Part shown: piece after piece, positions 11,336 through 60,422 of the stretch
Numbering within the stretch: position 1 is the first letter of the stretch
How the letters are laid out: each line of letters starts with the position of its first letter
Origin: Scyliorhinus canicula
Lineage: Eukaryota
Length of the DNA: 64,000 nucleotides
Reading direction: 5' to 3'
Assembly: GCF_902713615.1 (NCBI RefSeq)
Contig: NC_052147.1
Span: forward strand, 235,297,758-235,361,757
The notes under the pieces: generated by a model
Seen by the model: only the letters and a program-made list of their open reading frames with translations
Database searches by the model: none
What the model was told of the DNA's origin: nothing
Made by a program: the position numbers and the translations under genes

Positions 11336-11559
11336 TGCCTCAGAATGTTTTCTGATTATGTTGCTACCACTGATGTTAGACAGTAATTATCTGTTTTATT
11401 TTGCCTACTTCCCTTCTTGAATAATGGTACCACATGTCCTCTACCCTTAGGAAGATCCAATAGGGAGACTAACCTCACCTCTCAAATTCCAAGACGGTGC
11501 TGGAGTGAGGCGACTTCTTGCAAGCTGTGCCCAGCATACCCTCTAATTCTATCTTTGAC

Positions 11560-11805
11560 TCTCGTTCTATGCTTCTAAAACTTAATTCTAACTCTTTTAA
11601 GCTGTCTAACAATGTTTGAATTACCTACTTTGTATTAAGTTGATCTTTTCTCTGTAACTCTATAACTGTAACATTGTATTCTGCAGTCTCTCCTTCCTTC
11701 CCTATGTACGGCATGCATTGTTTGTACAGCATGCAAGAAACAATACTTTTTCACTGTATACTAATACATGTGACAATAATCAATCAAATCAAATCAAAAT
11801 CAAAT
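11560..11805 (+). mobile_element. LINE 3' end (Rex1/Babar-like tail)
   Basis: caatactttttcactgtatac..tgtgacaataat followed by (caaat)n; resembles the tail at 63376-63440. Confidence 0.6.
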
Positions 11806-15426: not shown

Positions 15427-16376
15427 AACTTGGGAATGCCGGCGGTCGAGGCCGCCCGAGTACCCTTGACTGATCAAGTGGCCCATGTCTTTCTTAGGCC
15501 AGGTCGGAAATTGGTTAAAGTTGATGGATCGTTTGGTTTCTTTGAAACTTGTGTTATGGGGGGTTTCTTTGTTCCTTTTTGTGTGTCTCTTCCCGTTGCC
15601 AACTTCCCTTAATTATTGTTGTTGTAGGGGGGGCTTTTTTACTGTTTTTTGATCTGTTCTTGAAGGGTTATGGTTACTGTTCTGTTCGATGGAGGGTGAT
15701 GGTTAAATACGTTATTATTGGGTAGTTATTTAGTTATGCAGGCATAGTTATGTATTTATGTATTTATTTGAGATTTGTTATTTATATTGTTATATTGTTA
15801 AGTTGGGGAGGCGGGATGGGGGGGGGGCAAGTTGGTTATGCGGGTTTTCTTTTTCTCTTTTTTCTTCCTCTCGTTTAAGGGGGCCTTTTTATGGGCTTGG
15901 ATGGGGACGGGGGTGGAATTGAAGATGGCGGGGTAGGGTGTGGCCGGGCGAAAGCGCGGGCTTTCCCCTGTTTCCCGCGCGCGGGACGGAGGAAGGGGGA
16001 GGAGAGAAGAGTGGGGTGTGGCCAGCAATGGCGGTTTTTCCCGCGCTGAAGCGGGGTCAGAGAGGGATGGCAAGGGGGGGGGGAGGCCCCTCCCCCCCCC
16101 CACATCGGGAGGAGTCGGAGTGTGGCAGGGGCAGCCGGGTCAGCGAAAATCAGCTGACTCTCGGGAGTACGATGGTGGATACACCGCGGCTAGGAGGGGT
16201 CCTAGCCAAGGGGGGGGGGGGGGGGGGGGGAAGGGGGGTTAGGGGGGGATACCGGGTTGCTGCTGGAAAGGCCGAGGACGGGAAGGGAAGAACGGGAGGA
16301 GAGAGGGGGGGGGGCCATCGCCATGGGGAGCGGGTCAGAAGGGGAGGGTCGACCCGGGGCGAACAGGGGACAGGAC

Positions 16377-19300
16377 ATGGCTAATAGACAGGGGAAAGGG
16401 ACAGGTCGCTCCGCGACCCGGTTGATTACTTGGAACGTGAGGGGGCTGAATGGGCCGGTCAAGAGAGCAAGGGTTTTTTCACACCTAAAGGGACTGCAGG
16501 CGGATGTGGCAATGTTGCAGGAGACTCACTTGAGAGTAGTAGACCAGGTGCGCCTGAGAAGGGGGTGGGTGGGGCAGGTGTTCCACTCAGGCTTGGACGC
16601 AAAGAACCGGGGGGTGGCGATTTTGGTGGGAAAGAGGGTGTCGTTCGTGGCGGCGCAGGTGGTAGCAGATAAGGAGGGTAGGTACGTGATGGTGAAGGGT
16701 AGGCTGCAGGGAGAGAATGTGGTGCTGGTGAATGTGTATGCCCCGAATTGGGATGACGCAGGTTTTATGAGGCGCCTGTTGGGCCTCATTCCGGGTCTGG
16801 AGGCAGGGGGCCTGATCATGGGGGGGGGACTTCAATACAGTGCTCGACCCTGGGCTGGACAGATCGAGTTCCAGGACGAATAGGAGGCCGGCAGCGGCAG
16901 AGGTGCTAAGGGGGTTCATGGAGCAGATGGGGGGGGGGTAGACCCTTGGAGATTTGGCAGGCCAAGGGCGAGGGAGTATTCTTTTTTCTCCCACGTCCAC
17001 AGGGTGTACTCCAGACTAGACTTTTTTGTACTGAGCAGGGGGCTGATTTCGAGAGTGCAGGACACGGAGTACTCGGCCATTGCGATTTCGGACCATGCAC
17101 CACACTGGGTAGAGGTAGAACTGGGGGAAGCACGGGACCAGCGCCCGTTGTGGCGCCTGGATGTGGGGCTGCTGGCGGACGATGAGGTGTGCGGAAGGGT
17201 CCGGAAGGGCATTGAGAGATATCTGGGCACGAACGACACGGGCGAGGTGAAGGTGGGGGTAGTCTGGGAGGCCCTGAAAGCAGTGATCAGAGGAGAGCTG
17301 ATCTCCATAAGGGCACACAGAGAAAGGAAGGAGAGGCAGGAGAGGGAGAGACTGGTGGGGGAACTTATAGAAGTGGACAGGAGATATGCGGAGACACCAG
17401 AGGAGGGGCTGTTGAGGGAGCGGCGCAGTTTACAGGCCCAGTTTGACCTACTGACCACTAGGAAGGCGGAGACGCAATGGAGAAGGGCACAGGGCGCGGT
17501 CTATGAGTACGGGGAAAAGGCGAGCAGGATGCTAGCACACCAGCTGCGCAAGCGAGATGCAGCCAGAGAGATTGGGGGAGTGAGAGAGAAGGGAGGGAAC
17601 GTAGTGCAGAAGGGGCAAGAGGTGAACGGGGTCTTCAGGGATTTCTACAGGGAATTGTACCGGTCTGAGCCGCCCAGGAGGAGGGGGGGAATGGAGAACT
17701 TCCTCGATAGATTGAGGTTCCCAAAGGTCCAGGAGGAACGGGTGGAGGGGCTGGGGGCGCCGATAGAGCTGCAGGAGCTAGTTAAAGGGATAGGCCAGAT
17801 GCAGGCGGGGAAGGCGCCGGGGCCGGATGGGTTCCCGGTGGAATTTTATAAGAAGTATGTGGACTTGGTGGGTCCAGTGCTGGTGCGAGCCTTCAATGAG
17901 GCGCGAGAGGGGGGGGGTTCTGCCCCCGACAATGTCACAGGCCCTGATCTCCTTGATCCTGAAGCGGGACAAAGACCCTGTACAGTGCGGGTCCTACAGA
18001 CCTATCTCCCTCTTGAATGTAGATGCCAAACTGTTGGCAAAGGTCCTGGCAACCAGAATAGAGGATTGTGTGCCAGGGGTAATCCATGAGGACCAGACGG
18101 GGTTCGTAAAGGGACGACAACTTAACACAAATGTCCGGAGACTGTTGAATGTGATTATGATGCCAGCAGTGGAGGGGGAGGCTGAGATAGTGGTAGCACT
18201 GGATGCGGAGAAGGCATTCGATAGGGTGGAGTGGGAATACCTGTGGGAGACGCTGGAACGGTTTGGGTTTGGGGAGGGATTTATCAAGTGGGTGAAGCTG
18301 CTGTATTCGGCCCCGATGGCGAGTGTGGTTACAAACGGGAGGAGGTCAGAGTATTTTGGGCTCCATCGAGGTACCAGGCAGGGATGCCCCCTATCCCCCT
18401 TACTATTTGCATTAGCGATCGAACCGTTGGCGATGGCACTGAGGGGTTCAGGGGGGTGGAGAGGACTGACAAGGGGAGGGGAGGAACATCGGGTATCACT
18501 CTATGCGGATGATTTGTTGTTATATGTGGCGGACCCGGAAGGGGGAATGCCGGAGGTAATGGAAATACTAGCGGAGTTTGGGGACTTTTCGGGATATAAA
18601 TTAAACGTGGGTAAAAGTGAGGTCTTTGTGATACACCCGGGAGATCAGGGGGAGGGAATTGGGCGGCTCCCCTTTAAGAGAGCAGTAAAGAGCTTCAGGT
18701 ACTTGGGGGTGCAGGTGGCAAGGAACTGGGGGACCCTCCACAAGCTGAACTTTTCAAGGCTGGTGGAGCAGATGGAGGAGGAGTTCAAGAGGTGGGACAT
18801 GGTACCGCTGTCGCTAGCAGGGAGGGTGCAGTCAGTCAAAATGACGGTCCTCCCGAGGTTCTTGTTTCTGTTTCAGTGCTTGCCCATCTTTCTCCCCAGG
18901 GCCTTCTTGAAGAAGGTAACTAGCAGCATTATGGGCTATGTGTGGGCACATGGCACCCCTAGAGTGAGAAGGATTTTCTTGGAACGGAGTAGGGACAGGG
19001 GAGGATTAGCGCTACCCAATCTTTCCGGATACTACTGGGCGGCGAACGCATCGATGGTGCGCAAGTGGGTGATGGAGGGGGAGGGGGCAGCTTGGAAACG
19101 TATGGAGAGGGCGTCCTGCGGCAATACAAGCCTGGGGGCGCTAGTAACGGCACCATGGCCGCTCCCCCCCACAAGGTATACCACGAGTCCGGTAGTGGCG
19201 GCCACCCTGAAAATCTGGGGGCAGTGGAGGCGACACAGGGGGGAAGTGGGGGGTCTGATGGCGGCGCCACTGAGAGGGAACCACAGATTTGTCCCGGGGA

Positions 19301-20175
19301 ACACTGGCGGGGGATTCCAGAGTTGGCACAGGGCGGGCATCAGGCAACTGAGGGACATGTTCATAGAGGGGAGGTTTGCGAGCCTGGGAGAGCTGGAGGA
19401 GAAATTTGAGCTCCCCCCGGGGAACACGTTTAGATACCTGCAGGTGAAGGCATTTGCCAGACGACAGGTGGAAGGATTTCCCTTGCTTCCCGATAGAGGG
19501 GTGAGTGATAGGGTGCTGTCAGGGGTCTGGGTCGGAGAAGGAAAGGTCTCGGACATCTACAAAATAATGCAGGAGGTGGAGGAGGTATCGATAGAGGAGC
19601 TGAAAGACAAGTGGGAAGCGGAGCTGGGAGAGCAGATAGAAGATGGGACATGGGCGGATGCCTTAGAGAGGGTCAATTCGTCGTCGTCGTGCGCAAGGTT
19701 GGGCCTCATCCAATTTAAGGTGCTGCACAGAGCCCATATGACGGGGACTAGGATGAGTCGGTTCTTCGGGGGTGAGGACAGGTGTGTTAGGTGTTCGGGA
19801 AGCCCTGCGAACCATGTACATATGTTCTGGATGTGCCCGGCACTGGAAGAGTTCTGGGAGGGGGTGGCGGGGACGGTATCGAGAGTGGTGGGAACCAGGG
19901 TCAAACCAGGGTGGGGGCTAGCGATTTTTGGGGTTGGGGTGGAGCCAGGAGTACAGGAGGCAGGGGAGGCCGGAATATTGGCCTTTGCGTCCTTGGTAGC
20001 TCGGAGACGGATCTTGATTCAGTGGAGGGACACAAGGCCACCAAGTGTTAACACCTGGTTAAACGACATGGCAAGCTTCATCCAATTGGAAAGAATCAAA
20101 TTCGCCCTGAGAGGGTCGGTACAGGGGTTCTTTCGGCGGTGGCAGCCCTTCCTTGACTTTCTGGATCAGAGATAG
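16377..20175 (+). CDS. L1 ORF2p (APE endonuclease, RT, CCHC); three frameshifts, all in G homopolymers
   Basis: TWNVRGLN, LQETH, NVYAPN, SDH, GPDG, QGCPLSPLLF, YADD, CVRC..HMFWMC. Confidence 0.95.
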
Positions 20176-20649
20176 GAACTGGAGGCCGAAACAGCAGCAA
20201 CCCGGGGAGAAAGGGGGGAGGGGGGAAGGGAGGGGGGGGGGATAGCAACGTAGGGAGCACGTCAGCGGGGGGTCGCGGGCAATGACTGCCCGAGGCCATC
20301 GGCAGAAAGGGAAAAACGGTTTGGTTGCTAGACTGGTAGCGCGGGGGGGGGGGGGGGGGGGGGAGGATGGGGGGGTGCGCGCGGGGTAGGGCGTGGGGAG
20401 GATTTTCCAGGGGGGATTTGTTGTGTTATAATTTAAAATGTAGTAGGGGTAAATGTTTGTATCGAAAAATTTCAATAAAAATTATTTAAAAAAAAAAAAA
20501 AGAAATGTTCCTCCCTAAAATATCCTGAGATATATGCTACAGGAATTTTATGCCTTTATCTATGTGCCTGAGGTGTCTGATTTTCTAACTTAGCAGTTGT
20601 CTTGGCTTTCAGCCAGATGTGCATTGAAGTTCCACTGCCGGATGTGAGC

Positions 20650-27260: not shown

Positions 27261-28243
27261 TATCACCACGGAGAAGAGGAGATAGAGTGGCAGGGATAAG
27301 GGCCTTGGATTGTTCTTGAAAAAAAAATACTTTGGCTGTTTTGGTACTTTAATTGTCCTTTTATGGACCCTTAATGACATTGTTTCACATCAGGTACCAT
27401 CCACTTAGGGTGGGGGAACTGGATAGCCATTTTGTACCCCATCTAAATGTTGTATTGCGTGAACATCCTGTAAGTTCTTGTAAAATCTCAGCAGACTGCC
27501 TGAAAATGGGATAGAAAGCAGACAAAATGTGGCTCCAGCAGGCTATGGAGGGCATATATTAATGCATCATATTAGAAGTATTATACCAAATCCAAAATTA
27601 TTGGTACTGTAGAGAATTATGCCATGCCAAGTCAAATAATCACGTTTTTCTAAGTTTGGCTAATTGTATCAGGCTGGGTAGCTCATTATACTCAATAACC
27701 ATAAAAGCAAATAATTTGCAACACCAGAGGCATTTTCAGGATTACGTGCAAAGACTCAGATTTTACAGTCAGCAGTGAAGCAATGGCACTTGCCATTGCC
27801 CTCCAAAAAAGTTGCCCACACAAAACCAGCAATGTCCTAGATGAGGGTTTCATCTTTTTCCCAATGTTAATTTAAATCTGGCACCAAGTTAAATGGTACT
27901 CCAGGTGCTCCAAAATTGATGCAATCAAGTCAGGTAAGCAGCCAATCACATTTGTGGATTCTTGCAGAAAGCAAACCAGAAAATCGAATTACCCTTCATT
28001 TTTCCGAAATTTTACAGAAAGTAAAATCAATGATTGAGACATACACATTAGATCCTGAAATTTCATGAGCTACCTCTTTTAGAAGAAATGTTATGAAAAC
28101 GTTTCAAATTTTTACCAATATGGAACAAAAATTACACAAATACAAAATTAGTTTTCCAGGGACAACAGGGCACTTTCCTATAACTTGGTACAGCATTTAA
28201 AACCTAGTCAGACTTCATTAGTGAGGTATAACACTTGTGGGGG

Positions 28244-28620
28244 ATGATGAAAGCTGGATTATGATCTGTATATAATATGAGTAGATCGTCATCATCTGTA
28301 TGTGTATTGTAAGTTATATGTTTCACCGTTGCAATTCTAGCATCTGACCAGCAGGTGGTGCGAGTATGGAGGCACGTGATCCGGACGCACCATGTGTTCC
28401 AGGACAAGGTGTTAGTAAGGAGTTGATAGCAGTCGCATATTAGAGTTTCTCTGTAGTATCTTAGTGTAAGTTAGTGTTAGACCATTATTTCCAACTGTAT
28501 TAATCTTAGACATTATAGTAGTCCTCTAGAGTAGTGTTAGTAATAAATAGTTTGTTGTAAAACAAAGTCTAATGTTCTTTGTTAACACTACCACATCAAG
28601 ATTCAACAAAGAACATTACA
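28244..28620 (+). repeat. 5' LTR
   Basis: Aligns along its length with 32870-33259; ends ...cattaca directly before the PBS. Confidence 0.92.
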
Positions 28621-28637
28621 TGGTACCTAGGAGTGGA
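28621..28637 (+). promoter_or_regulatory. Primer-binding site, tRNA-Leu(UAA)-like
   Basis: tggtacctaggagtgga resembles TGGTACCAGGAGTGG, the complement of a vertebrate tRNA-Leu(UAA) 3' end (recalled, not searched). Confidence 0.7.
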
Positions 28638-29017
28638 TTTTGAAAGAGAACAGTTAGGGACAATTAGGTATGGGGAGAAGACACAAGCAAACAATCGGAG
28701 ATTCAGAGAAAATCGGCTGCAAAACAACATACTACCAGGATTGTTGAAGCGAGATGGAAGCATTGAAGACTCCCAGAACAACTGCTCACGACCGGTAATG
28801 TAGATGCGAACTGGTGTGCTTTCAAACAGCAGTTCACTTTTTACGTGCAAGCTCTTGGTCTCCAAGAAGCTTCAGACCTGGGAAAAATAGCGCTCCTAAT
28901 GACAGTGGCCGGTCCCCAAGCAATTGATCAGTATAATACTTTTCAGTTCGGTTCGGAGGAAGACAAGAATAGCTACTCAAAAATAACCGGGCAATTTGGT
29001 AACGATTGCCATTCACA

Positions 29018-29353
29018 AAACATAGAACATAGAACAGTACAGCACAGAACAGACCCTTCGGCCCTCGATGTTGTGCCGAGCAATGATCACCCCACTTAAA
29101 CCCACGTAACCCGTATACCCGTAACCCAACAATCCCCCCCATTAATCTTACACTACGGGCAATTTAGCATGGCCAATCCACCTAACCCGCACATCTTTGG
29201 ACTGTGGGAGGAAACCGGAGCACCCGGAGGAAACCCACGCACACACGGGGAGGATGTGCAGACTCCACACAGACAGTGACCCAGCCGGGAATCGAACCTG
29301 GGACCCTGGAGCTGTGAAGCATTGATGCTAACCACCATGCTACCGTGAGGCCC
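29018..29353 (-). mobile_element. V-SINE inserted in gag
   Basis: Near-identical to 53113-53449. Confidence 0.92.
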
Positions 29354-30302
29354 TAATTTATAATTCACCACACTCCCTCGCTTCGGGCTCACACTCTGAG
29401 CATTATGTATTCAGGATGAGACTGCAAAAATAGAGCAAAACCTTTGACTGTTTTGTCATGGATCTAGATTTCGAAGCGCAATCCTGTAATTTTGCAGACC
29501 TCCACGATTCATTGATAAAAGACCAAATTGTATACAGTCTGCAATGTGATAAATTACGTGAGTGATTGCTGAGGGAAAATGATTTGAAACAAGCAGATGT
29601 AATAAAAATATGCAAGGCCAATGAGATTGCACAAAAGCAAATCACTGAGGTCCAGACGCAAAAAGTGTGGTGAGAAAAAAAAGAGGACGTGACTGTTGCC
29701 ATCTTTGCTATGTCGCAGCGGGATCAGAAATGTGGTCCAGATGGCAGCCATTTTGAGAAATATTCAGAGAATGCAATTTTATATCGGAGGTACAGCAGAA
29801 CGCACAGCCTGAGAAAATGCCCTGCATATGGCAAAACGTGCGGCAGATGCTCCAAGAGAAACCAGTTTGCCCAGCAATGTCTGTCGATTGCAAGAGTGCA
29901 GCAACCTAATACTGTTAATGTAATAACTGAAGCTAAAAAAATGAGTGATTCATCAATTGTGCAAAGTGCAGCCCTGAACAGGCAAGCTGAGTTTAATGAT
30001 GCAGCAGATGGCTTGGAAGGTTCTTTTTTCATGGACATGATCAATGAAGGAGCTGAACAACAAAACACAAAAATAGAAGAATAGATAGCAAACCACTTGG
30101 ATAATTGGATGATTCCGCTCAAAATTAATCAAACCAGCACAAACATCAAACTGGACACAGGTCAGAGCAACCTTAATCATCGAAGCAGATCTGCTGAAGA
30201 TGTGGATTCAACCACGAATAGAGGATAATGATTGCAGTCTCACTGACTACCATGACGCACCAATCAAGACATTGGGAACATGTAACCTACAAATCGAAGT
30301 CA

Positions 30303-30608
30303 GCAGCAGGTAGCACGGTGGTTATCACTGTTGCTTCACCTCACCATGGTCCCAGGTTCGATTCCCAGCTTGGGTCACTGTCTGTGCAGAGTCTGCAGGT
30401 TCTCCCTGTGTCTATGTGGGTTTCCTCCAAGTCCTCTGGTTTCCTTCCACAAGTCCCGAAAGACGTGCTGTTAGGTGAATTGGACATTCTGAATTCTTCC
30501 TCAGTGTACCCGAACAGGCGCCAGGATGTGGTGACGAGAGGAATTTCACAGTAACTTCATTGCAGTGTTAATGTAAGCCTACTTGTGACAATAAAGATTA
30601 TTATTATA
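30303..30608 (+). mobile_element. V-SINE with (TTA)n tail inserted in the protease region
   Basis: Same family as 4836-5148 and 51948-52245. Confidence 0.9.
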
Positions 30609-30716
30609 GTTAATGCACAATTATTCATAGTTAAATTTGCAATTGTTGAAGCAGACAAGCGATCACTGCTAGGCGCAGCAGCATGTGTATCACTGCAGCT
30701 AGTACAGCGAGTATAC

Positions 30717-30830
30717 GATGAAGACACCGACTATACAGCCACCAACGATACAGACACCGACTATACAAACACCGAAGATACAGGCACCAATGATACGGAC
30801 ACCGACGATACAGACACCGAAGATACAGAC
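30717..30830 (+). repeat. 15-bp tandem repeat (about 7.5 copies) encoding Asp/Thr pentapeptides
   Basis: Units such as gatacagacaccgac; translation DEDTDYTATNDTDTDYTNTEDTGTNDTDTDDTDTEDTD, in frame with the protease end. Confidence 0.9.
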
Positions 30831-30939
30831 CGATGGCATACATGGCAGCCATGGATGCAAAGCCAGTACAGACTCCAGAGGAACAATCCAAGACTCAGGC
30901 CACAGCTCCACATACAGTGAATTACAAAAAAGGTTCTAC

Positions 30940-31527
30940 TGAAAGGGTGGTAGACCTAGAAGATATGGGTGCCCTTGAGAGTGTGAAACTGTGTAAATAC
31001 TAAGTTGGAAGTCGACAGAAACAAAGTCTTCAAAGCGAAGCTAAAGGCTGCTTCAGAAGATGACTTTATGGGTTATTGAGTCAAATGTCTCCTCGAAAAG
31101 AAACACGATGGTGAAGTCAATGGCTGCTCGTCAAACATCGAACAGAGATGTCGTGTCAGAACAATATCATGGCCTCAGAAAGAAATTGATGACCTTTTGG
31201 AATTGAAACAGCACCATGAGCTCGAAATGAAGGAACTGGAGAGGACACAAGCTGTGCTACTGGAGGAGAAGAGGAAACGAGAAACCCTGCAACTTGCCTC
31301 TCAGTTTCAATGAGCAGAAATAGTACACCAGAAACAGCTTATTGAGAAGGATCGACAAGTCATAAACTCGTTGAACACAAAGGTGAACTCCCTTCAGCAC
31401 AGTATTGAGTCTCTAGAGAAAGAGAGAAGTCACATGAAAGGGAATTGCCTTGAATTGGAGAACAAACTTACTCAGTCGAAAAAAGCTTTTGAAACAAGTG
31501 AAGACAACAGAAATGCAGGGCGAGATA
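30940..31527 (+). pseudogene. Unidentified degenerate coiled-coil coding segment
   Basis: [76 protein letters not shown]; source not recognised. Confidence 0.55.
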
Positions 31528-31530
31528 CAA

Positions 31531-32491
31531 AGAACAGCAGCTCACTGCAAAGAACAGCAGCTCAGTGCAAAGAACAGCACACTCCAGCAACTAGAGGAAA
31601 AGCTGAAAGGGCAGTCTGATCATGAAGAGGTTAAAATAGAGCTGAGGGTACTGAAGTCGATGAAAGTGTAGCATCAGGAGGATCTGGATCACAGGAATCC
31701 AAAACCCTAGAGGTACTTCTGCTGAAGATCAACCGCTGATTGCAATCTGAAAATGCAACTCTGCATATCACCAACAGTGATGTAAGTGATCCCTTTCCAG
31801 CATTAGATCTAGGACAACAGCTCCAGCTCAAACTCCAGAATATGCAAGGTATAGAATCAGAAACTGCGGGACACACTTGAGGAATATAACAAGGAGTTTG
31901 CAGAAGTCAAGAATCAGGAAGTAACAGAGAAAAAAATCAATGAAACGAGTATGAGCAGATCTTGAGCAGCAAAGCAGCAAGCCTGCTCTTGGGAAAGAGC
32001 AGAAACTATGGAATAACTTCATGGAAAAGAAAAGGAAGTTGTAGGAGACTCAAACAATTTTCTCCTCCAAATTTGAGGAGGCTGATCACAAAGTTCAAGT
32101 GTTACAGACAGCCCTGGAATCAACTCAGACTGAGCTATGTGATTGAAAAGCAAAGTATGATGCAGAATCAACTGCCAAAGTGGATGAAGTTGAAGTTATC
32201 ATGACAGATCTGGAAAGAGCCAATCAGAGGGCAGAGGTGGTTCAAAGAGAGACAGAGACCTTACGAGAGCAACTTTCCTCAGCTAACAAATCCCTATAGC
32301 TGGCCACCCTGATCCAGAAAGCTCCTGGTGTGGAACAAACTATCAAAGTGTTGACGCAATCAAGTTAGGAAGTTGAACTGATGGCAAAAGACCGTGAGAT
32401 AATACAATTAGTTGAGGATGTACAAAGGTTGCAGGCAAACCTAACTAAACTCCGTGAAACCTCAGCAAGTCAGGTCTCACAACTAGACCAG
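31531..32491 (+). pseudogene. CUX1: Circularly permuted processed copy of the CUX1/CASP coiled-coil exons (circRNA-derived pseudogene)
   Basis: [54 protein letters not shown] joined to [72 protein letters not shown]; no introns; stops and frameshifts present. Confidence 0.92.
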
Positions 32492-32869
32492 TTCATGCTC
32501 AAGAAAAATATAGATCAAGGTGCCAAGCCTATCTTGAGAGATAAAACAGAAAAGAACAAGAGTTCTTCATGTTTCAGCAACAGATCTTTCAAGAAGTCAA
32601 CAAATCTTTCAAGAAGCAAGAAATCAATTGTTCTTCAACAATAGAGCAAAGAAAAGAAGTCAACACATATTTTAATACAAAAAACATAGGAAAAATAATA
32701 CTTCAGGTAACAAAGGCCGTTCAGCAGCAGAATCAGTCGGAAGCCTGATCGATTGAACTGAACAGTCACATTTGCATGCATGCAATTTTAAATGACTAAA
32801 ATCAATGTATATGTGTATAGTTTGAACATACATGATTATGATTCAAAATTATTTTGAAAGCAAGGAGGA

Positions 32870-33259
32870 TGTGATGAAAAGTAGACTATCATCTGTATAT
32901 AATATGAGTAGATCATCATCATCTGTATATGTATTGTATGTTCTATGTTTTACTGTGTAGTTCTAGCATCCGGCCAGCAGGTGGGGTGAGTGTGCAGGCA
33001 CGTGACCCGAATGCATTATGTGTTCCAGGACAAGATGTTAGTAAGGAGTTGGTGGCAGTCGCATATTAGAATGGCTCTGTAGTATCTTAGGGTAAGTTAG
33101 AGTTAGACCATTATTTCCAACTTTATTAATCTGAGACATAATAGGAATCATGCAGAGTAGTGTTAGTAATAAATAATTTTGTTGTAAAACAAAGTCTAAT
33201 TTTCTTTGTTAACATTACCACATCAAGATTCAACATCAGCAAAGTCAAAGAGCATTACG
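32870..33259 (+). repeat. 3' LTR
   Basis: Starts tgtgatga after the PPT gaaagcaaggagga; matches the 5' LTR. Confidence 0.92.
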
Positions 33260-33384
33260 GGGGGGGTGTTGGTTATCAGTATTATGATGCAAAAGAGCAT
33301 GTTTTCAACTGTTCAGTTAATTTACTTCATTAATGTCTGTGGAGAGTTCAACAGTGCACCTTAATCAGAAATCGTAGAAAGAAA

Positions 33385-33745
33385 TTGGGTGAGGTGGTGG
33401 CATAGTTGTATTGTCACTGAACAAGTAAACCAGAGACCCAGAATAATGCTCTGGGGTCCCAGGTTCAAATCCCACCACTGCAGATGGGAAAATTTGTATT
33501 CAGTAAAAATATATCTGGAAATAAAAGCCTAATGATGACCATGAAACCATTGTTGATTGGCATAAAAATCCATCTGATTCACTAATGCCCAGAAATCGTC
33601 TGTCCTTACCTGGTCCACACATGAATACTTACATGTGACTCCAGATCCACAGCAATGTGGTTGACTCTTAACTGCCCCCTCAAGGTCAATTAGGGATGGG
33701 CAATAAATGCTGGCCCAGCCTGCAACGCCCATGAATGAATTTGAA
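33385..33745 (+). mobile_element. tRNA-derived SINE with L2-like tail
   Basis: ggtggtggcatagttg A box, ggttcaaatccc B box, tail gggcaataaatgctggcccagcc..atgaatgaat. Confidence 0.75.
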
Positions 33746-37128: not shown

Positions 37129-37325
37129 ATGCAAACCTTTCAGCATAACTTAGCAAAATGTGATTAAGTCCAAGAACAGGCGTGGGGATTGCGATGCGCG
37201 ATTAACCTGCGTCCAGTGATTCCGAAGCAGGCTGCGTGTAAACCTTGTGCTACTTCCCATTTAAATGGTTGCTGCACGCTGTCAGTGGTAACCATGCTGT
37301 TGAGTGGTGCTGCACCCCTGTGGGG

Positions 37326-37366
<41 letters not shown>

Positions 37367-37543
37367 CTGGAAGACAGTGACAGGCTAGCAATTCCGAAAG
37401 ATAGTCAGCATTGTTTAAAGCTAGCCTGTATCTCCGGGAGGGCAGATGCATTCTGGTTGTAGCAAGCGCTGGAACTAATTACAGAATACAGTGTGAGCAA
37501 GAAGAACATAGTGATGGTACAAATAGCAAAGAACAGGCTGATG

Positions 37544-43069: not shown

Positions 43070-46000
43070 TGTGGTGGTATGAATGGGAGCACTGCCATTT
43101 GTGCAGAGCATTGGTTTCCCATTGGCTCTGGCTGGTCATGTGCCTCTCGTCTGATTGGCTGGGACTAGTCATGTGACTGCTCGCCAATTGGTCGAGAGGC
43201 AAGTAGACCCCGCCTTCGAGGTGGGATATAAGTACCCAGAGTTCCCGGCGGTCGGCCTTTCTCTGTAGTCGACCACCGGGCTAACAACTAGCTTATTAAA
43301 GCCAAAGTTTGGATCTTCATCGTGCCTTGCGTCCAATTGATGGTACATCAATTTAATCAGCTAGAATTTTGAAGTGGAGCTACGCATCAAGATTGACTGT
43401 TTCCGCATCAGCCCGCATGCTTCAAATGCGCCTGCAAACTTTAAACATTGGCAGGCGTGTTTGAACAGTTACCTGACAACTGCAGCCGGCAAGCCCACCA
43501 AGGAGCAGAAACTCCACATCCTCCACTCGTTCATGGGCACGGTTGTATATTCAATGATTGAGGACGAAAATGATTATGACGCGGTCATGGATATTCTGAG
43601 AGGACACTTTCTCCGGCCGGTCAACGAAGTATATGCACGGCATCTCCTGACTACTAGACAACAGTTCCCTGGTGAGTCACCAGTTTACCAGGCCCTCACG
43701 GCTCCAGGGAGAATGTGCGCCTGTCCCCAAGTTTCTGCGACATAGTACATGGAACTTTTAATTAGAGACGCTTATGTTGCCGGCATGCAATCCTCCTCTA
43801 TCCACCAACGATTTCTGGAGAAGAACGCCCTCAGCCTAGCTGAGGCACGGAACCTCGCAACCTCCCTGGAGGTCGCCGACCTGAACGCCCGCGCATACGC
43901 CCCCGGCCGCGCAGCAACCCCCTGGATTTCATGGCACGTGCCACCTCCATCCTCTGCTGACCCCGACCCCCCCCCCCCCCCCCCCCCCCCCAGGTCTGTG
44001 CTGCGGGATGCTCCGACAAGTTAACGGGGCCCCGCTGCTATTTTTGAGACCTCTCCAAACACCCCCGCCCGTGCTGCCCAGCCCGCTCCGCTCTGTGTAA
44101 GAGCTGCGGGAAGAAGGACCATTACGCTGTGGTCTGCCAGACCAAGTCGGTCGCTGCTGTTCCACGCAGCGACCGCGGATGGCCCCCCCCCGGGCCCACC
44201 CAGGGCCCAGCGCGTGCACCAACCTCTCCGGCCCGCCTCTTGGCCCCCGGAACAGGCCCACGGTCCTCCCGACCCCCGCTCCCGGCTGCCCCGACCAGCC
44301 CACAGACGCCGCTGACACTGCCCCCAGCTGCCACGAGGTTCCCATGGGTGCCGCCATCTTTGGTCCCGGACACCACGTGCGGGTCATGGGCACCGCCATC
44401 TTGGGGCCCCAGCTCCACGTGCGGGTCCTGGGCGCCACCATCTTGGGACCCCGATTCCACGTGCGGGCCCTGGGCGCCGCCATCTTGGCCAACACGGAAG
44501 GCCCTGCCAGCGATTACTCTGCCACCGAGGATGATCTGGAACTCTCGCCACGACTTGCTTCCATCACACTCGACCAGTCGCGACCACGCACGCTCGCCAA
44601 GACTACGACAACGATCCAGCTCAACGGACATGAGACAAAATGCCTACTGGACTCCGGGAGCACGGAGAGTTTCATCCACCCCAACACAGTAAGACGCTAT
44701 GCTCTCCCCATCCACCCAGTCAAGCATAAGATCGATTTGGCCTCGGGTCCGCACTCCGTCCAGATCACCGGCTGCTGCATAGCGGACCTCATGGTCTTCA
44801 AAAACTACAAACTCCTCATTCTCCCCCGTCTATGCGCTCCGGCACTCTTGGGCCTGGATTTCCAGTGCAATCTGCAGAGCTTGACCTTCCAATTCGGCGG
44901 CCCTATTCCCCCCCTTACTGTCAGCAGCCTCGCGTCCCTCAAAGTGGACCCCCCTTCCTTGTTTGCTAATCTCACCCAAGATTGTAAACCTGTCGCCACT
45001 CGGAGCAGACGATACAGTGCCCAGGACCGGACCTTCATCGGGTCCGAGGTCCAGAGGCTCATTAAGGAAGGAGTCATTGAGGCCAGCAACAGTCCCTGGC
45101 GAGCCCAAGTGCTGGTAGCTCGGACTGGGGAGAAAAACGGATGGCCATTGATTACAGTCAGACCATGAACAGGTGTACGCAGCTGGACGCGTATCCTCTC
45201 CCCCGTATTTCCGACCTGGTTAACAGGATCGCGAAGTACAAAGTCTTTTTCACGGTGGATCTTATGTCTGCATACCACCAGCTCCCCATCCACGCGAGTG
45301 ACCGCAAGTACACCGCGTTTGAGGCAGATGGGCGCCTCTACCACTTCTCAGGGTTCCATTCGGTGTCTCAAATGGGGTCTCGGTCTTCCAACGGGAGATG
45401 GATCGAATGGTCGACAAGCACGGGTTACGGGCTACCTTCCCGTATCTCGATAACGTCACCATCTGCGGCCACGACCAGCAGGACCATGACATCAACCTTC
45501 AAAAATTCCTCCCAACCGCAAAACTCCTAATTTAACCTACAATAAGGATAAGTGCGTGTTTAGCACCGACCGTCTAGCCATCCTTGGCTACGTAGTGCAT
45601 AACGGAGTGATAGGCCCCGATCCCGAACGCATGCGCCCCCTGATGGAACTCCCTCTCCCCAACTCCCTCAAATCCCTCAAACGCTGCGTGGCCTTCTTCT
45701 CCTGGACCCTTCACGCTTCCAAAATCCGCCACTCCTTGGTGGAAAAGGAGGCACAGGCCATAGTTGAAGCTGTGCGATATTGGAGGCACTATCTAGCCGG
45801 CAGGAGGTTTACCCTCCTCACAGACCAACGGTCAGTGGCTTTCATGTTTGATAATGCACAGAGGGGCAAGATCAAGAACGACAAGATCTTGCGGTGGCGG
45901 ATCGAGTTGTCCACGTACAACTACGATATCTTGTATCGTCCTGGGAAGCTCAACGAGCCTCCCGATGCCCTATCCCGCGGTACGTGCGCCAGCGCGCAGA

Positions 46001-47599
46001 TTGACCACCTCCGCTCCCTCCACACGGACCTCTGCCATCCAGGGGTCACCCGTTTTTACCACTTTAAGACCCGCAACCTGCCCTACTCCGTTGAGGAAGT
46101 CAGGACCGTCACCAGGGACTGCCACGTCTGCGCCGAGTGCAAACCGCACTACAACACCCCGAACGAGCTCATCTGATCAAGGCGTCCTGCCTCTTCGAAC
46201 GACTTCAAGGGCCCCCTCCCCTCCAACAACCGTAACACATATTTCTTGAGTGTTATTGATGAGTACTCCCGCTTCCCTTTCGTCATCCCCTGTCCCGACA
46301 TGACCACAACAACCGTCATAAAGGCCCTCCTATCCATCTTCTCCCTGTTTGGTTACCCCGCGTACATCCACAGAGACCGGGGGTCCTCCTTTATGAGTGA
46401 CGAACTGCGTCAGTTCCTGCTTAGCAGGGGCATAGCCTCTAGCAGGACGACCAGTTATAACCCCCGGGATAACGGTCAGGTCGAGCGGGAGAATGGCACC
46501 ACCTGGAAGACCATCCTGCTGGCCCTACAGTCCAGAGATCTCCCTATCCCCTGTTGTCAAGAGGTCATCCCTGACTCCCTCCATTCAATCCGGTCTCTCC
46601 TCTGTACTACCACTAATCAAACACCTCATGAACATCTTCTTGTTTTCCCTAGGAAGTCGTCCTCAGGATCCCCTCTCCCGACCTGGCTGGCCGCCCCCAG
46701 ACCCATCTTACTCCGGAAGCATGTGCGGGTGCACAAGTCCGACCCGTTGGTTGAGCGAGTCCAGTTACTCCACGCTAACCCGCAGTATGCGTACGTGGTG
46801 TATCCCGACGGTCGGCAGGATACGGTCTCGCTTCGGGACCTGGCACCCGCCGGCGTGCGGCCTTCTCCTCTTACAGCAACACCTCCCCCCTAACCCCAAT
46901 TCCCACCAGCACCCCCTGCACCCCCATGACCCAGCGCACAGACGCCCTCTTCCCCGATTACAGCGTCTCCACCACCGGCCCGGGGTTCGGAGACACATCT
47001 ACGACCGACGCTCCCGGAGGCAAGGACGACCATCAGCCCGACGTCACCGGCTCCACTGCGACGGTCCACCAGAACACCACGGGCACCCAACAGGCTGATC
47101 GTGTCCATCTGATGCAGCCATGCGACTTTATTGGACTCTATTGTAATTTTTTTTGCATCCTAATGTAGTTAGTACTGTTCATTTTGCCATGAGCCAGTGG
47201 GCAGCCCCCATTTTCTCGATTGTCTCTACTCATACCACCAGTCCTCGGACCCCCCCTCTCTCTCTCTCTCTTCCCCTTACAACACCCCCCCCGCCTTCTT
47301 TCTCCACAAGGGGGGGAATGTGGTGGTATGAATGGGAGCATTGCCATTGATGCAGAGCATTGGTTTCCCATTGGCTCTGGCTGGTCATGTGCCTATCATC
47401 TGATTGGCTGGGACTAGTCATGTGACTGCTCACCAATTGGTCGAGAGGCAAGTAGACCCCGCCTCCGAGGCAGGGTATAAGTACCCAGAGTTCCCGGCGC
47501 TCGGCCTTTCTCTGTAGTCGACCACCGGGCTAAGAACTAGCTGATTAAAGCCAAAGTTTGGATCTTCATCGTGTCTCGCGTCCAATTGATGGTACATCA
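43070..47599 (+). mobile_element. Gypsy LTR retrotransposon, degenerate but bounded
   Basis: 281-bp LTRs 43070-43350 and 47319-47599 (TG..CA), 5-bp TSD TCCAT (43065-43069 and 47600-47604), PPT aagggggggaa. Confidence 0.96.
43374..46893 (+). pseudogene. gag-pol (PR, RT, RH, IN) of the Gypsy element, frameshifted
   Basis: CKSCGKKDHYAVVC knuckle; LLDSGS; SPWRAQV; DAYPLPRI; YLDN; EKEAQAI..TDQ; HHCC; HRDRGSSF; GQVERENG; deletion near 45700 removes part of the RT-RH linker. Confidence 0.92.
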
Positions 47600-55870: not shown

Positions 55871-58800
55871 TCAAATTTTTGTGTGCATCAGTTTCTTTAA
55901 CTCAGTTCCCAGAAGGGGCTCATTGCTTAAATCATCACCTTTTCCTGGCTGCCAGACTCGTGTCTGCATATTCTGGGTGGTAGCCGCGTAGGCCTGTAGG
56001 TCCGATTCATCATGTCTTACCAACCTGTAGGAATTGTCACGTTGCCAAAAGGGAGTATCGGGGTTGTCATGTGGCGGTGTGTAGCCAGGAACTGGTGTAC
56101 TGGAAGTGGAAGCAACGTTGTTGGGAGCGGGCGTAGGAAGAGTCGTTGGGTGGAGACAGTCGTACAAGGGGTCGAGAAAATCCATGGCGTTGTTCCGGGG
56201 GCTAGGGTAGCTGATAGTGGGGAGGTTGCTAGGGATGGTAGACAAATCCGGGAGGCTCTCATCAGAGACAAGTTCAAGGTTGAAACCTGTGAGCATGGGT
56301 GGAGTCCAGGGGAGAGTGTCGTCCTGAGGGGGAGGGTTGGAGTGGGCATCGGGCTGAATCGTCAGTGGGCAGAGCATCATCCTCTCCCATTACCAAGGCT
56401 AAGTGGTGGGTGTGGATCCGTAGAGTTTGAGTTGGTTGATGTTGGAACCAACCAGTCTTACTGTTGGGGTACATTATCTTGTACACAGAGGGGCTTACTT
56501 TGTCAGAGATGGAGTAGGGGCCTGCGAATTTAGGGGCTAAGAAGGAGCTGGTTTTGTACAACAAGATCATAACTTGCTGGCCAACTGCATGCTCTATGGG
56601 GTGAACCTTTTTGTCAAAGCTGGCTTTACTCTGCTTTTTCCTAGCACCTAGTCGGACAGCAGCAGCTAATTGTGCCGCTTTAATGTTCTCTGTGACCTGT
56701 TGGACTGTTTTTTCGTGGGTGAGCGCGGTTACTGCGGGATTTGCCAAATTGAGCCCAAATAAATATTCAATGCCTTTCATGGGTGTCCCTGTCATAAGGG
56801 TGTGGGGGGTGAAACCTGTGGAACTGGAAACTGTTCTTGATAATCATGAGAGCAAAGGGTAGTACCGTGTCCCGATGGGCAGGACGGTGGCATAGTGGTT
56901 AGCACAATTGCTTCACAGCTCCAGGGTCCCAGGTTTGATTCCCGGCTTGGCTCACTGTCTGTGCGGAGTCTGCACATCCTCCCAGTGTTTGCGTGGGTTT
57001 CCTCCGGGTGCTCTGGTTTCCTCCCACAGTCCAAAGATGTGCAGGTTAGGTGGATTGTCCATGATAAATTGCCCTCAGTGTCCAAAATTGCCCTTAGCGT
57101 TGGGTGGGGTTACTGGGTTATGGGGATAGGGTGGAGGTGTGGGCTTGAGCAGGGTGCTCTTTCCAAGACTCGATGGGCCGAATGGCTTCCTTCTGCACTG
57201 TAAATTCTATGAAGTGGAATTGTTCTGCTGGACCGTCTTCCTGATGGTTGTTTTTAAAGTCCAGTTCATGCGCTGTACTATGTTGCTGGACTAGGTGTGG
57301 TAGGCTATGTGGATTTTTTGTTTGATACCGAAAATGGTCATAACATTTAGCATTACAATGCCGGTGAAGTAGGAACCTTGATCTGACTGAATGCTGCGTG
57401 GAAGACCCCAGCGTGTAAAGATCTGTTGGGTCAAAATTTTTGCAGTGGCCTTTGCCGTGTTTGAACGTGTGGGGAATGCTTCAATCCATTTTGTAAATGT
57501 ATCGATGATGACTAGTACATACTTGAAACCATTTCTGTAGGGGGGGAGGGGACCAATGTAATCAATTTGCAGATTTATCCAGGGGCCTTCTACAGTTCAG
57601 GTGTGTCTTAATTGTCCCTTCTTTGCATAATGTTCCGAATTGTTCTGGGTGCAAATGAGGCAATTGTCTACATAATGTGTGACGTCGCTTTTTAATTCGG
57701 GCCATCAGCACAAGGGTCTTAAATGGGCAATGGTTGTGTCTATTCCCTGATGTCTGTGTCCGTCATGGAATTGGTAGATTAACTGGTTTCTGTCTTGGGT
57801 GGGGACCATATAAATTCCATCCTTTAACACTATTCCGTCCTGTATTGTGAGTGTGTCCTTCCATTTACCATAGGGGGCTGCAGTTGTGCCTTTCAGTATC
57901 TGTTTAAGGGAGTCATCTGCTTTCTGTGCCTGAGATAAATCCTCAATATTTGTTTGGGAGACCCGGATTGAATGTATCTGTTCACACTCGGGGGGTTGCC
58001 AGAAGTGATTAGTGCGTGATCCAACTTTAGCTAAGGCGTCGGACTAGCGATTCCCGGGGGGGGGGGAGGTGTGGTGATGGCTCTTTAATGATGCCGTATG
58101 TGCGGCCGGTGGCTTTCTTAAGAATATGTTTCAGGAGAGGGGCGGATGGTTGGGGTTTTCCGTTGGTGGATACAAAACCTCGAGATTCCCATAGGGGAAA
58201 GAATTCTGTTAGACTGTTTCAGACATACAAGCTGTCAGAGTGTATGGCTGCAGGAGTTGGAAAGGAGTCTGGGTGGTCAATTACATAAGCTATGGCTGCC
58301 AGTTTGGCTGCCTGCGAACCCAAGTGGCCGGGTAATTTTAAAGATACCTCTTCTAGTGGGCGCCCCTGTGAGCCCTCCATGTAAATACCGCATCCTGTGA
58401 TTCTTACTCCATCCTCAACAGTGGAGGAGCCATCTACATAGATCTTTACTGTGTCCCCTGTGTCTTGCGAACTTTGTGTCTCACCGTTTACACGTGGTTG
58501 TCGCGATTTGGGAACAAAGGGTCCTGTGGGGTGTGTGGCTGCAATATCTGGCATTCGTGTGGGGTCCTTGCATATTGTAAATTGTCTGCTAAGAACGTGT
58601 GGGTCTTGGTGCATTTCACAGAAATATCCCTGCCTTGTAATAAGAGTGTCCAGCGAGCTGCTGTGGTGTGGCTAACGGAACCACACTTTAGTTTGCCGTC
58701 TAACAACAGTTGGGTGGGAGTGTGCTCAGTTAATATCGTGAATAGGTTGAGGCCTGTAATGTAGGCAAAGTACTGAACTGCCCACAAGACTGCAAGCAAG

Positions 58801-60419: not shown

Positions 60420-60422
60420 TCA

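What the first reader, a model, noticed from the sequence alone, without database searches (positions are those of the whole stretch)
31531..32491. Retroposed CUX1 circular RNA: permuted, intronless coding copy with an apparent back-splice junction inside an LTR element
Seen: the segment translates, through stops and frameshifts, as CUX1/CASP coiled-coil sequence in scrambled order. It starts at [11 protein letters not shown], runs to ..LQSENATLHITNSDVS, jumps back to DPFPALDLGQQLQLK and continues to ..[10 protein letters not shown], ending at the residues where it began, so it is one complete turn of a circle (about 0.94 kb). The junction agtg|atccc lies at 31788/31789. Recalled: in human CUX1 the last exon shared by CUX1 and CASP (exon 14) ends at NSDLS-G| and exon 5 starts G|AT-CCC (DPVPAL), both phase 1. 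Inference: the template was a back-spliced exon 5-14 circRNA that would be frame-preserving, copied by Gypsy RT template switching. circRNA-derived pseudogenes are known in mammals; I know of no such case for CUX1 or in a shark. It would be a fossil record of germline circRNA expression.
Basis: partly seen in the sequence, partly recalled or inferred. Interest (0 to 1): 0.95.

Follow-up and report, generated by a model that had tools for sequence, protein, structure and literature searches.

The report
Circular-RNA CUX1 copy inside shark retrotransposon
A shark LTR retrotransposon carries an intronless, circularly permuted copy of the CUX1/CASP gene whose internal joint lies exactly where a downstream exon end meets an upstream exon start. 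The copy was therefore made from a back-spliced circular RNA, and it then spread to dozens of genomic copies as cargo of the element.

Summary
It is not a one-off pseudogene.

- **Permutation.** Window 31551-32487 is one turn of CUX1/CASP coding sequence. Reference residues about 341-417 lie at 31552-31788 and residues about 101-338 at 31789-32487.
- **Joint.** AGTG|ATCCC equals a donor-exon end (..CTGAGTG|gtaagt) plus an acceptor-exon start (..tgcag|ACCCC), as read in genomic contigs of other vertebrates.
- **Parental mRNA.** The species' own linear CUX1 mRNA runs straight through the closure point. It departs from the copy exactly at 31788, where the mRNA has the upstream exon (NVYKRLIDVP).
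- **Circle size.** It would be about 954 nt (318 codons).
- **Setting.** The copy sits in a 5-kb non-autonomous LTR element with gag, zinc knuckle and protease remnants, a polypurine tract and a target-site duplication. It is nested inside a fragment of a second, unidentified expressed coiled-coil gene.
- **Family.** At least 25 Scyliorhinus torazame gene models carry this cargo (the CUX1 part, the second-gene part, or both), and at least 12 show the same joint. Four fetched loci share the edges that are present in them, and three of the four keep the joint. This points to one capture followed by amplification.

Not shown: the living circRNA, the shark's own genomic splice sites, the Gypsy assignment, and microhomology at the switch points.

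This combines two known kinds: circRNA-derived pseudogenes and LTR-mediated retroposition. The scan had already noted the carrier element on this same window.

The parts
28245..28620 (+). 5' LTR of the carrier element. Its first two bases are mutated or lost, and it ends ..CATTACA.
   Evidence: Direct repeat with 32870-33259, 88.3% identity, K2P 0.128. The same LTR is found in S. torazame loci L001-L004.
28621..28636 (+). Primer-binding-site-like TGGTACCTAGGAGTGG directly after the 5' LTR.
   Evidence: Sequence read. The same motif follows the 5' LTR in L001. The tRNA match was not tested.
28658..30700 (+). Decayed gag, CCHC zinc knuckles and aspartic protease (DTG) of the element. It is interrupted by two later repeat insertions (about 29020-29398 and 30300-30608).
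   Evidence: tblastn of L001 gag, knuckle and protease pieces gives 67-73% identity. Pfam zf-CCHC_5 E=0.023 and gag-asp_proteas E=0.063 are both below threshold. The inserts are absent from L001.
30722..30830 (+). 15-bp tandem repeat (Asp/Thr/Glu-rich) at the start of the cargo region.
   Evidence: TRF, 7.3 copies. The same repeat is expanded in S. torazame models P0059 and P0093.
31181..31527 (+). Fragment 1 of a second, unidentified coiled-coil gene ('gene X'), sense strand. This copy has about 130 bp of private deletions near its right end.
   Evidence: RNA contigs of 4756 nt (X19) and 4279 nt (X6) lie on 31181-31504 at 86% identity with no gaps, then jump to 32523. The deletions show up against L001 and L004. 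Atlas, PDB, Pfam and homology searches gave no name.
31528..31547 (+). Private 20-bp tandem duplication at the left edge of the CUX1 part.
   Evidence: TRF period 20, 2.6 copies. L001, L002 and L004 have a single unit.
31551..31788 (+). CUX1 circle, segment A: from mid-exon ([11 protein letters not shown]) to the last base of the donor exon (..NSDVS + G).
   Evidence: tblastn. The parental mRNA contig lies on 31551-31780 at about 90% identity. The donor boundary ..CTGAGTG|gtaagt is read in L007, and ten read-through ORFs SDLSG(K/R).. agree.
31788..31789 (+). Back-splice-type joint: G (last base of the donor exon) | AT CCC (first bases of the acceptor exon).
   Evidence: Acceptor ..ttcttatgcag|ACCCCGTGCCC in L006. 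Donor in L007. The X6 loose end before 31788 reads the upstream exon NVYKRLIDVP. The joint is conserved in L001-L003 and in at least 12 S. torazame models.
31789..32487 (+). CUX1 circle, segment B: from the acceptor exon start (DPFPALDLGQQ) to the closure point (..SQVSQL-).
   Evidence: tblastn. The parental mRNA contig lies on 31788-32484 at about 87-89% identity and continues at 31551 ('goes back 934, both 3'). This is seen in two RNA runs and two DNA runs.
32485..32491 (+). AGACCAG, the right-hand copy of the 7-nt motif whose left-hand copy is AGAACAG at 31551-31557. It marks the entry and exit point of the circle copy.
   Evidence: GACCAG is on the right and GAACAG on the left in all five copies compared. 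The parental mRNA reads AGAACAG. Whether AGACCAG is native to gene X is not known.
32488..32582 (+). Fragment 2 of gene X, continuing the same reading frame (..[12 protein letters not shown]..). It is followed by element tail.
   Evidence: The same RNA contigs that lie on 31181-31504 resume at 32523-32582. The right edge is identical in L001-L004.
32856..32869 (+). Polypurine tract GAAAGCAAGGAGGA directly before the 3' LTR.
   Evidence: Sequence read. It is conserved in L001-L004.
32870..33259 (+). 3' LTR (TGTGATGA..CATTAC[G]).
33260..33264 (.). Probable 5-bp target-site duplication GGGGG; its partner is at 28239-28243.
   Evidence: Copy L001 has a perfect CTGGC/CTGGC duplication.

Best explanation
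**Template.** In an ancestor of catsharks, CUX1 pre-mRNA was back-spliced. The exon ending ..NSDLS-G (the last exon shared by the CUX1 and CASP isoforms) was joined to the exon starting (D)PVPAL. This gave an exonic circular RNA of about 954 nt whose length is a multiple of three.

**Capture.** Inside a virus-like particle of an LTR retroelement, reverse transcriptase was making minus-strand DNA. It had already switched from element RNA onto a cellular coiled-coil mRNA ('gene X'). It then switched onto the circle at the motif AGA(A/C)CAG, copied one full turn, and returned to gene X at the same motif. Finally it returned to element sequence downstream of the protease.

**Product.** The result is a non-autonomous element: LTR, gag, protease, [gene X, permuted CUX1, gene X], polypurine tract, LTR. 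All parts are in sense orientation and originally in one reading frame. Proteins supplied in trans then mobilised it to dozens of copies, which have since decayed.

**Shown.**
- The permutation.
- The splice-exact joint.
- The closure point inside a parental exon.
- The LTR, polypurine-tract and target-duplication architecture.
- The shared edges across copies.
- Both flanks belonging to one other transcript.

**Inferred.**
- The circular topology of the template.
- The particle setting and the order of switches.
- The microhomology-guided entry and exit.
For: 1. **CUX1 identity and circular permutation.**
2. **Splice-exact joint.** AGTG|ATCCC equals the donor end ..GAGTG|gtaagt (L007; ten read-through ORFs) plus the acceptor start cag|A(C/T)CCC (L006). 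Both are phase 1.
3. **The organism's own linear mRNA.**
   - It is continuous across the closure point. The joint 32484 to 31551 has 3 shared bases and is seen in two RNA runs and in DNA contigs.
   - It departs from the copy exactly at 31788, where it reads the upstream exon NVYKRLIDVP.
   - The contig ends 8 nt past 31780, which gives a circle of 954 nt = 318 codons.
   - Teleost equivalents are 939-951 nt.
4. **Content limited to the circle.** There is no sequence of the exon before the acceptor or after the donor. The ends overlap by 3-7 nt, so this is one turn.
5. **Setting.** It lies between two LTRs with a polypurine tract, a primer-binding-like site and a target-site duplication. Gag, knuckle and protease are upstream. 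All cargo is in sense orientation.
6. **One capture, then spread.** Of four S. torazame loci on different contigs, three keep the left edge (L003 has an assembly gap there), three keep the joint (L004 has a 17-bp deletion across it), and all four keep the right edge. At least 12 annotated models carry the joint. L001 has a perfect 5-bp target-site duplication.
7. **Both flanks are one RNA.** They belong to one other 4.3-4.8-kb transcript that is not an element transcript.
8. **Precedent.** LTR-mediated retroposition by microsimilarity-guided template switching, with multi-gene chimeras and secondary retroposition, is documented (PMC5131818). So are circRNA-derived pseudogenes with LTR-rich flanks (PMC4897178).
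Against: - No living circRNA with this joint was seen. The available raw RNA libraries are oligo-dT or poly(A), and assembled contigs drop rare forms.
- The splice sites were read in genomic contigs of other, unnamed vertebrates. The shark's own CUX1 locus was not readable, because the S. torazame gene range is 319 kb and no DNA is served.
- The native gene X sequence at the switch motif is unknown. Microhomology and exact adjacency of the two gene X pieces are therefore inferred.
- A linear RNA with repeated exons would give the same joint.
- The class of the reverse transcriptase donor (Gypsy or other) is unknown.
Confidence: 0.8

Rival explanations
1. The template was a linear CUX1 RNA in which the block of exons is repeated. 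This could come from a tandem exon duplication in the ancestral gene, or from trans-splicing of two pre-mRNAs (exon repetition). Reverse transcriptase copied a stretch spanning the repeat joint.
For: It would give the same splice-exact donor-to-acceptor joint. Nothing in the sequence proves closed topology. Dong et al. also warn that non-colinear joints can have other sources (PMC4897178).
Against: - Linear CUX1 mRNA contigs of the organism in two RNA runs leave the copy at 31788 into the normal upstream exon, and end at the donor-exon end.
- The S. torazame CUX1 model P0061 and Callorhinchus P0063 have the normal order.
- Exactly one unit length, with the same 7-nt motif at entry and exit, is unexplained on a linear repeat.
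Confidence: 0.08
2. Two independent template jumps on ordinary linear CUX1 mRNA, or a DNA-level rearrangement of a linear retrocopy (tandem duplication followed by trimming), produced the permuted order by chance.
For: Reverse transcriptases of LTR elements switch templates often, and the element already shows several switches (PMC5131818).
Against: - Both breakpoints would have to fall on exon boundaries to the nucleotide. My rough estimate, not a computed result, is about 1e-4 for about 10 boundaries in about 950 nt.
- The outer ends would also have to close the circle to within 3-7 nt.
Confidence: 0.03
3. The circle-derived cDNA was made elsewhere, for example by a LINE reverse transcriptase. 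It was then inserted at the DNA level into an element copy that already carried gene X, and that copy subsequently amplified.
For: A LINE with endonuclease and RT is present in the window. The order of events cannot be read from the sequence. No CUX1-less progenitor was found or excluded.
Against: - The insert has sense orientation and an in-frame fit.
- There is no poly(A), no target-site duplication and no endonuclease-type nick site at the insert edges.
- The same 7-nt motif sits on both sides, which fits copy-choice better.
Confidence: 0.07

Closest known systems
circRNA-derived pseudogenes of mouse and human (Dong et al. 2016, Cell Res, PMC4897178), e.g. the 33 circRFWD2 copies with an exon 6 to exon 2 joint
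   Same: - An intronless copy limited to the circle's exons.
- A non-colinear donor-to-acceptor exon joint.
- No poly(A) tail.
- Many copies sharing one joint.
- Association with LTR sequence.
   Different: - The parent gene is CUX1/CASP and the host is a cartilaginous fish.
- The whole architecture can be read here: the copy is internal cargo of a complete LTR element with gag, protease, polypurine tract and target duplication, nested in a second captured mRNA and covering exactly one turn.
- In the mouse case the mechanism was called mysterious, and only an enrichment of LTRs in the flanks was reported.
LTR-mediated retroposition (Tan et al. 2016, Genome Res, PMC5131818; plant Bs1-type gene capture)
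   Same: - Host RNA replaces part of the internal ORFs between two LTRs.
- Several template switches occur.
- Chimeras of two parent genes form.
- The product behaves as a non-autonomous element and is retroposed again.
   Different: - One of the templates here was circular, so the captured piece is permuted and bounded by one motif on both sides.
- Microsimilarity at the switch points, a hallmark in that study, is only inferred here.
Transducing retroviruses (gag, deleted pol, host sequence)
   Same: The polymerase region is replaced by host coding sequence fused in frame to upstream viral ORFs, and the product depends on a helper.
   Different: - This is a germline retrotransposon family, not an infectious virus.
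- The cargo is a coiled-coil scrap of two genes with no evident activity.
- All copies seen are decayed.
Human CUX1 circular RNAs (ecircCUX1 from exons 9-11, PMC8474885; circ-CUX1, PMC6895612)
   Same: The same parent gene is known to be back-spliced in another vertebrate.
   Different: The exons differ. The form inferred here runs from the DPVPAL exon to the last exon shared by CUX1 and CASP, and I did not find it described in the papers read.

Membership tests
circRNA-derived retrocopy (pseudogene) | Intronless copy of several consecutive exons of a parent gene | tested here: met
   The copy is colinear with spliced parental mRNA contigs over 31551-31780 and 31788-32484 and with CUX1 proteins.
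circRNA-derived retrocopy (pseudogene) | Non-colinear joint in which a downstream exon's 3' end is followed by an upstream exon's 5' end, exact at the splice boundaries | tested here: met
   The window reads AGTG|ATCCC. The donor GAGTG|gtaagt is in L007 and the acceptor cag|ACCCC in L006. The organism's mRNA leaves the copy at 31788. The boundaries were read in other vertebrates, not in the shark's own gene.
circRNA-derived retrocopy (pseudogene) | No parental sequence from outside the circle's exons, and no poly(A) tail | tested here: met
   Both flanks are gene X, not CUX1. There is no A-run at either edge.
circRNA-derived retrocopy (pseudogene) | The corresponding circRNA exists in the species | not testable with these tools
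   Only oligo-dT or poly(A) raw libraries and assembled contigs were on offer.
LTR-mediated retroposition product / non-autonomous LTR element with cargo | Two LTRs with a primer-binding-like site, a polypurine tract and a target-site duplication; host sequence replaces internal ORFs | tested here: met
   The LTRs are 88% identical, a polypurine tract is present, and TGG.. follows the 5' LTR. L001 has a perfect CTGGC duplication. Gag and protease are kept; RT and integrase are absent.
LTR-mediated retroposition product / non-autonomous LTR element with cargo | Microsimilarity between donor and acceptor templates at switch points | tested here: inconclusive
   The 7-nt motif AGAACAG / AGACCAG brackets the circle copy, but the native gene X sequence was not obtainable.
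LTR-mediated retroposition product / non-autonomous LTR element with cargo | Secondary retroposition of the chimera | tested here: met
   At least 25 S. torazame models on different contigs carry the cargo. Four loci were aligned and share every edge present in them. Other copies exist in organism A's DNA.
Ty3/Gypsy (Metaviridae) | RT, RNase H and integrase domain order, and RT phylogeny | not testable with these tools
   The pol region is replaced by cargo. Gag and protease give only sub-threshold Pfam hits and only a weak knuckle match to the Gypsy-like element at 43-47.6 kb. No autonomous partner was identified.

The most novel reading that the evidence does not exclude
The locus records the mechanism of circRNA retro-insertion itself. 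Copy-choice inside an LTR-element particle entered and left the circle at one 7-nt microhomology within an already captured mRNA. Because the circle is 318 codons long, one turn leaves a continuous gag-protease-coiled-coil reading frame. That chimeric frame may have been used by the element, for example as an assembly or dimerisation module, during its burst of amplification. If general, this would explain the LTR-linked circRNA pseudogene families of mouse.
Probability: 0.2. Interest if true: 0.75.

Novelty: new member of a known kind. Interest (0 to 1): 0.6.

Why it matters
**Known background.** CircRNA-derived pseudogenes are known from a handful of mammalian cases. How a circle without a poly(A) tail gets reverse-transcribed and inserted was left open (PMC4897178). 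A link to LTR elements was only suggested (PMC5408686).

**What this locus adds.**
- The full anatomy is legible: a splice-exact back-splice joint, exactly one turn, entry and exit at one short motif inside another captured mRNA, and all of it between LTRs with a target duplication.
- The product then multiplied. This gives a concrete, testable mechanism.
- It extends the phenomenon to cartilaginous fish.
- It dates germline presence of a CUX1 circRNA to before the amplification of this family. LTR divergence is 0.13-0.23; I did not convert this to years because I have no calibrated shark rate.
- It flags about two dozen 'hypothetical proteins' in the S. torazame annotation as fragments of this element.

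Tried and rejected
**Naming gene X: no result.**
- The ESM Atlas gave only generic coiled-coil neighbours.
- PDB sequence search found nothing.
- Pfam found nothing above threshold.
- The homology search with P0070 residues 1-112 returned only other copies of the element. The tool's length window excludes long parental proteins.

**Getting the shark's own exon boundaries: not possible.**
- The true S. torazame CUX1 model P0061 spans 319 kb, so no DNA is served.
- P0006 is not on record.
- P0007 (Coregonus) turned out to be a nearly intronless CASP-like gene and was useless for boundaries.

**Ideas dropped.**
- I first thought the 20-bp tandem repeat at 31528-31579 was a scar of reverse-transcriptase slippage at the circle's closure. 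Other copies have a single unit, so it is a private later duplication.
- I tested whether the Gypsy-like element at 43-47.6 kb is the autonomous partner. It has no LTR similarity and only a weak knuckle match.

**Other blanks.**
- Rfam and tRNA scans of 27.5-34.5 kb found nothing.
- Whether this particular insertion is shared with organisms B and C could not be judged. The unique 3' flank bin had no depth in any run.

**Deliberately not done.** Copies were only compared.

Full report
**1. What is in the sequence**

Three-frame translation of 30900-33000 shows coiled-coil coding sequence broken by stops and frameshifts. A stop-free 50-residue piece (32147-32296) was searched with phmmer against 1.8 billion representatives. 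It hits proteins that Pfam identifies as CUX1/CASP, with CUX1_N, CUT, homeodomain and CASP_C domains.

tblastn of those references back onto the window gives the permutation without relying on memory:
- Teleost CUX1 (P0006): residues 341-417 lie at 31558-31787, and residues 126-338 at 31855-32485.
- Callorhinchus (P0063): residues 139-207 lie at 31552-31799, and residues 15-146 at 32114-32509.

The copy has at least five in-frame stops and three frameshifts.

**2. Is the joint a splice joint?**

Two genomic contigs of other vertebrates were reached through read-through ORFs in the protein collection.
- L006 carries the exon that begins DPVPAL. The intron ends ..cttcttatgcag and the exon starts ACCCCGTGCCC, at the second base of the Asp codon.
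- L007 carries the exon that ends NSDLS. It reads ..GACCTGAGTG|gtaagttg, so the exon ends with the first base of the next codon.
- Ten further read-through ORFs from different sources read SDLSG followed by K or R. This is what G|gtaa.. or G|gtag.. translates to.

The window's AGT G|AT CCC is therefore exactly donor-exon end plus acceptor-exon start, both in phase 1.

Isoform evidence agrees:
- CASP and CUX1 forms diverge right after ..LSG.
- One database isoform (P0004) skips exactly DPVPAL..VKNQ.

**3. The organism's own RNA**

Contigs of two RNA runs and two DNA runs were laid on 30900-33600 at 80% likeness.
- A 1237-nt RNA contig (depth 183) lies on 31788-32484 and then, without a break in the contig, on 31551-31780. 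The tool reports this as 'goes back 934, 3 letters fit both sides'. This is the linear parental mRNA.
- It shows that the two outer ends of the window's CUX1 part are neighbours in the real transcript (..CAACT AGA ACAGCAG..).
- The same joint is in DNA contigs of both DNA runs (organism A and organism B). The closure point therefore lies inside one parental exon, as expected for a random template-switch point rather than a splice site.
- In the second RNA run the parental contig has a loose end before 31788 that reads AATGTTTACAAAAGACTAATTGATGTTCCA. This is NVYKRLIDVP, the upstream exon, and it is identical to the S. torazame CUX1 model P0061. Linear mRNA and the copy therefore part company exactly at the joint.
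- The first contig stops 8 nt beyond 31780, which is 31788, where the CUX1 and CASP isoforms branch. If so, the circle is 954 nt, or 318 codons. The teleost equivalents are 939-951 nt.
- The window copy is 87-91% identical to the parental mRNA.

**4. The setting**

- **LTRs.** Direct repeats at 28245-28620 and 32870-33259 are LTRs with 88.3% identity and K2P 0.128.
- **Element signals.** A polypurine tract lies at 32856-32869. A TGG.. primer-binding-like site follows the 5' LTR. There is a probable GGGGG target-site duplication.
- **Element genes.** Upstream of the cargo lie decayed gag, CCHC knuckles and a DTG protease. These are clearer in the S. torazame copy L001. Pfam support for them is sub-threshold.
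- **What is missing.** RT, RNase H and integrase are absent, and the cargo sits in their place. The scan's note s1-243516 on this same window said as much.
- **Class.** I could not test the Gypsy assignment.

**5. The cargo is a nest**

- A second RNA contig (4756 nt in X19, 4279 nt in X6; depth 23 and 42) lies on 31181-31504 at 86% identity without gaps. It then jumps to 32523-32582.
- It does not lie on 30900-31172 or on the LTR, so it is not an element transcript.
- Both flanks of the CUX1 circle are therefore pieces of one other expressed mRNA ('gene X'), in order and in sense.
- I could not name gene X.
- The circle copy is bracketed by AGAACAG on the left (the CUX1 version) and AGACCAG on the right, in every copy compared.
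- The simplest reading is that reverse transcriptase left gene X for the circle, and came back one turn later, at this one motif. If AGACCAG is native to gene X, this is microhomology-guided copy-choice of the kind shown for LTR-mediated retroposition (PMC5131818). That remains to be checked.
- RNase H nicking of the circle behind the polymerase would be another reason for leaving after one turn. This is my inference.

**6. Not a single fossil**

- The best phmmer hit was a 'hypothetical protein' of Scyliorhinus torazame that fuses gene X to CUX1.
- In all, at least 25 S. torazame models on different contigs carry the cargo, meaning the CUX1 part, the gene X part, or both.
- At least 12 show NSDLS|DPVPAL or its frameshifted equivalent.
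- Four loci were fetched. They align to the window's element, LTRs included, at 71-93% identity.
  - The left edge is kept in three of them. L003 has an assembly gap there.
  - The joint is kept in three of them. L004 has a 17-bp deletion across it.
  - The right edge is kept in all four.
- L001 is complete and has a perfect CTGGC target-site duplication.
- DNA contigs of the window's own organism at about 85% identity also cross the joint.
- Together these indicate one capture followed by amplification as a non-autonomous element.
- Private to the window copy are:
  - two deletions in gene X;
  - the 20-bp duplication at 31528-31547;
  - a 10-bp deletion near 32522;
  - two repeat insertions in gag and protease.

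**7. Rivals**

- **A linear RNA with repeated exons** would give the same joint. However, the organism's linear mRNA and two chondrichthyan gene models show the normal order, and the one-turn geometry would then be a coincidence.
- **Chance jumps or DNA rearrangement** would have to hit two exon boundaries to the base and also close the circle.
- **DNA-level insertion of a circle-derived cDNA** into an existing element cannot be excluded. It fits the sense orientation, the in-frame fit and the shared motif less well.

**8. Comparison with what is known**

This is a circRNA-derived retrocopy in the sense of Dong et al. 2016 (PMC4897178). All sequence-level criteria are met. The living circRNA was not tested.

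It is at the same time an LTR-mediated retroposition product in the sense of Tan et al. 2016 (PMC5131818). Kubiak and Makalowska 2017 (PMC5408686) already suggested that the two might be linked.

New here are:
- the parent gene and the host lineage;
- the fully readable architecture;
- the nesting inside a second mRNA;
- the one-motif, one-turn geometry.

Human CUX1 circRNAs described in the papers I read use other exons (PMC8474885).

**9. Verdict**

It is of moderate to good interest as a clean, mechanistically informative new member of a known kind.

Noticed in passing
window 33357-33600: An extremely high-copy repeat lies just 3' of the element. Summed contig word depth reaches about 9e4-2e5 in the DNA runs and thousands in the RNA runs, against about 100-500 for the cargo. 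It is probably a SINE-like family. There was no Rfam or tRNA hit.
   Followed up: partly
window 29020-29398 and 30300-30608: Two short repeats are inserted into the element's gag and protease region, inverted relative to each other. They are absent from the S. torazame copy L001 but present at many other places in loci L002-L004, so they are later insertions of a dispersed repeat.
   Followed up: partly
window 31181-31527 and 32488-32582: An unidentified expressed coiled-coil gene ('gene X'; mRNA contigs of 4.3-4.8 kb in two RNA runs) is the second cargo. Its name and function are unknown.
   Followed up: partly
window 30722-30830: A 15-bp tandem repeat coding Asp/Thr/Glu runs lies at the start of the cargo region. 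It is much expanded in some S. torazame copies (P0059, P0093).
   Followed up: no
window 32576-32625 (and L001 about 11480-11560): A second 20-bp tandem repeat lies near where gene X homology ends and the element tail begins. The number of units differs between copies.
   Followed up: no
window 16257-20175; 43070-47599; 58488-61638 (minus strand): Other mobile elements are present. One is a LINE with endonuclease and RT. One is an LTR element with 281-nt LTRs, protease, RNase H and integrase. One is a further RT/RNase H remnant on the minus strand.
   Followed up: partly
L005 (Coregonus sp. 'balchen', LR778271.1): A CASP-like model of 352 residues spans only 1405 bp, so it is nearly intronless. 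It may be an ordinary linear CASP retrocopy in a whitefish.
   Followed up: no
S. torazame annotation (GCA_003427355.1): About two dozen 'hypothetical protein scyTo_*' entries are fragments of this element's cargo, not genes. Examples are scyTo_0015116, 0015632, 0010648/9 and 0016134.
   Followed up: yes
window 20327-20386 and 37311-37367: There are long poly-G runs of 20-40 G.
   Followed up: no
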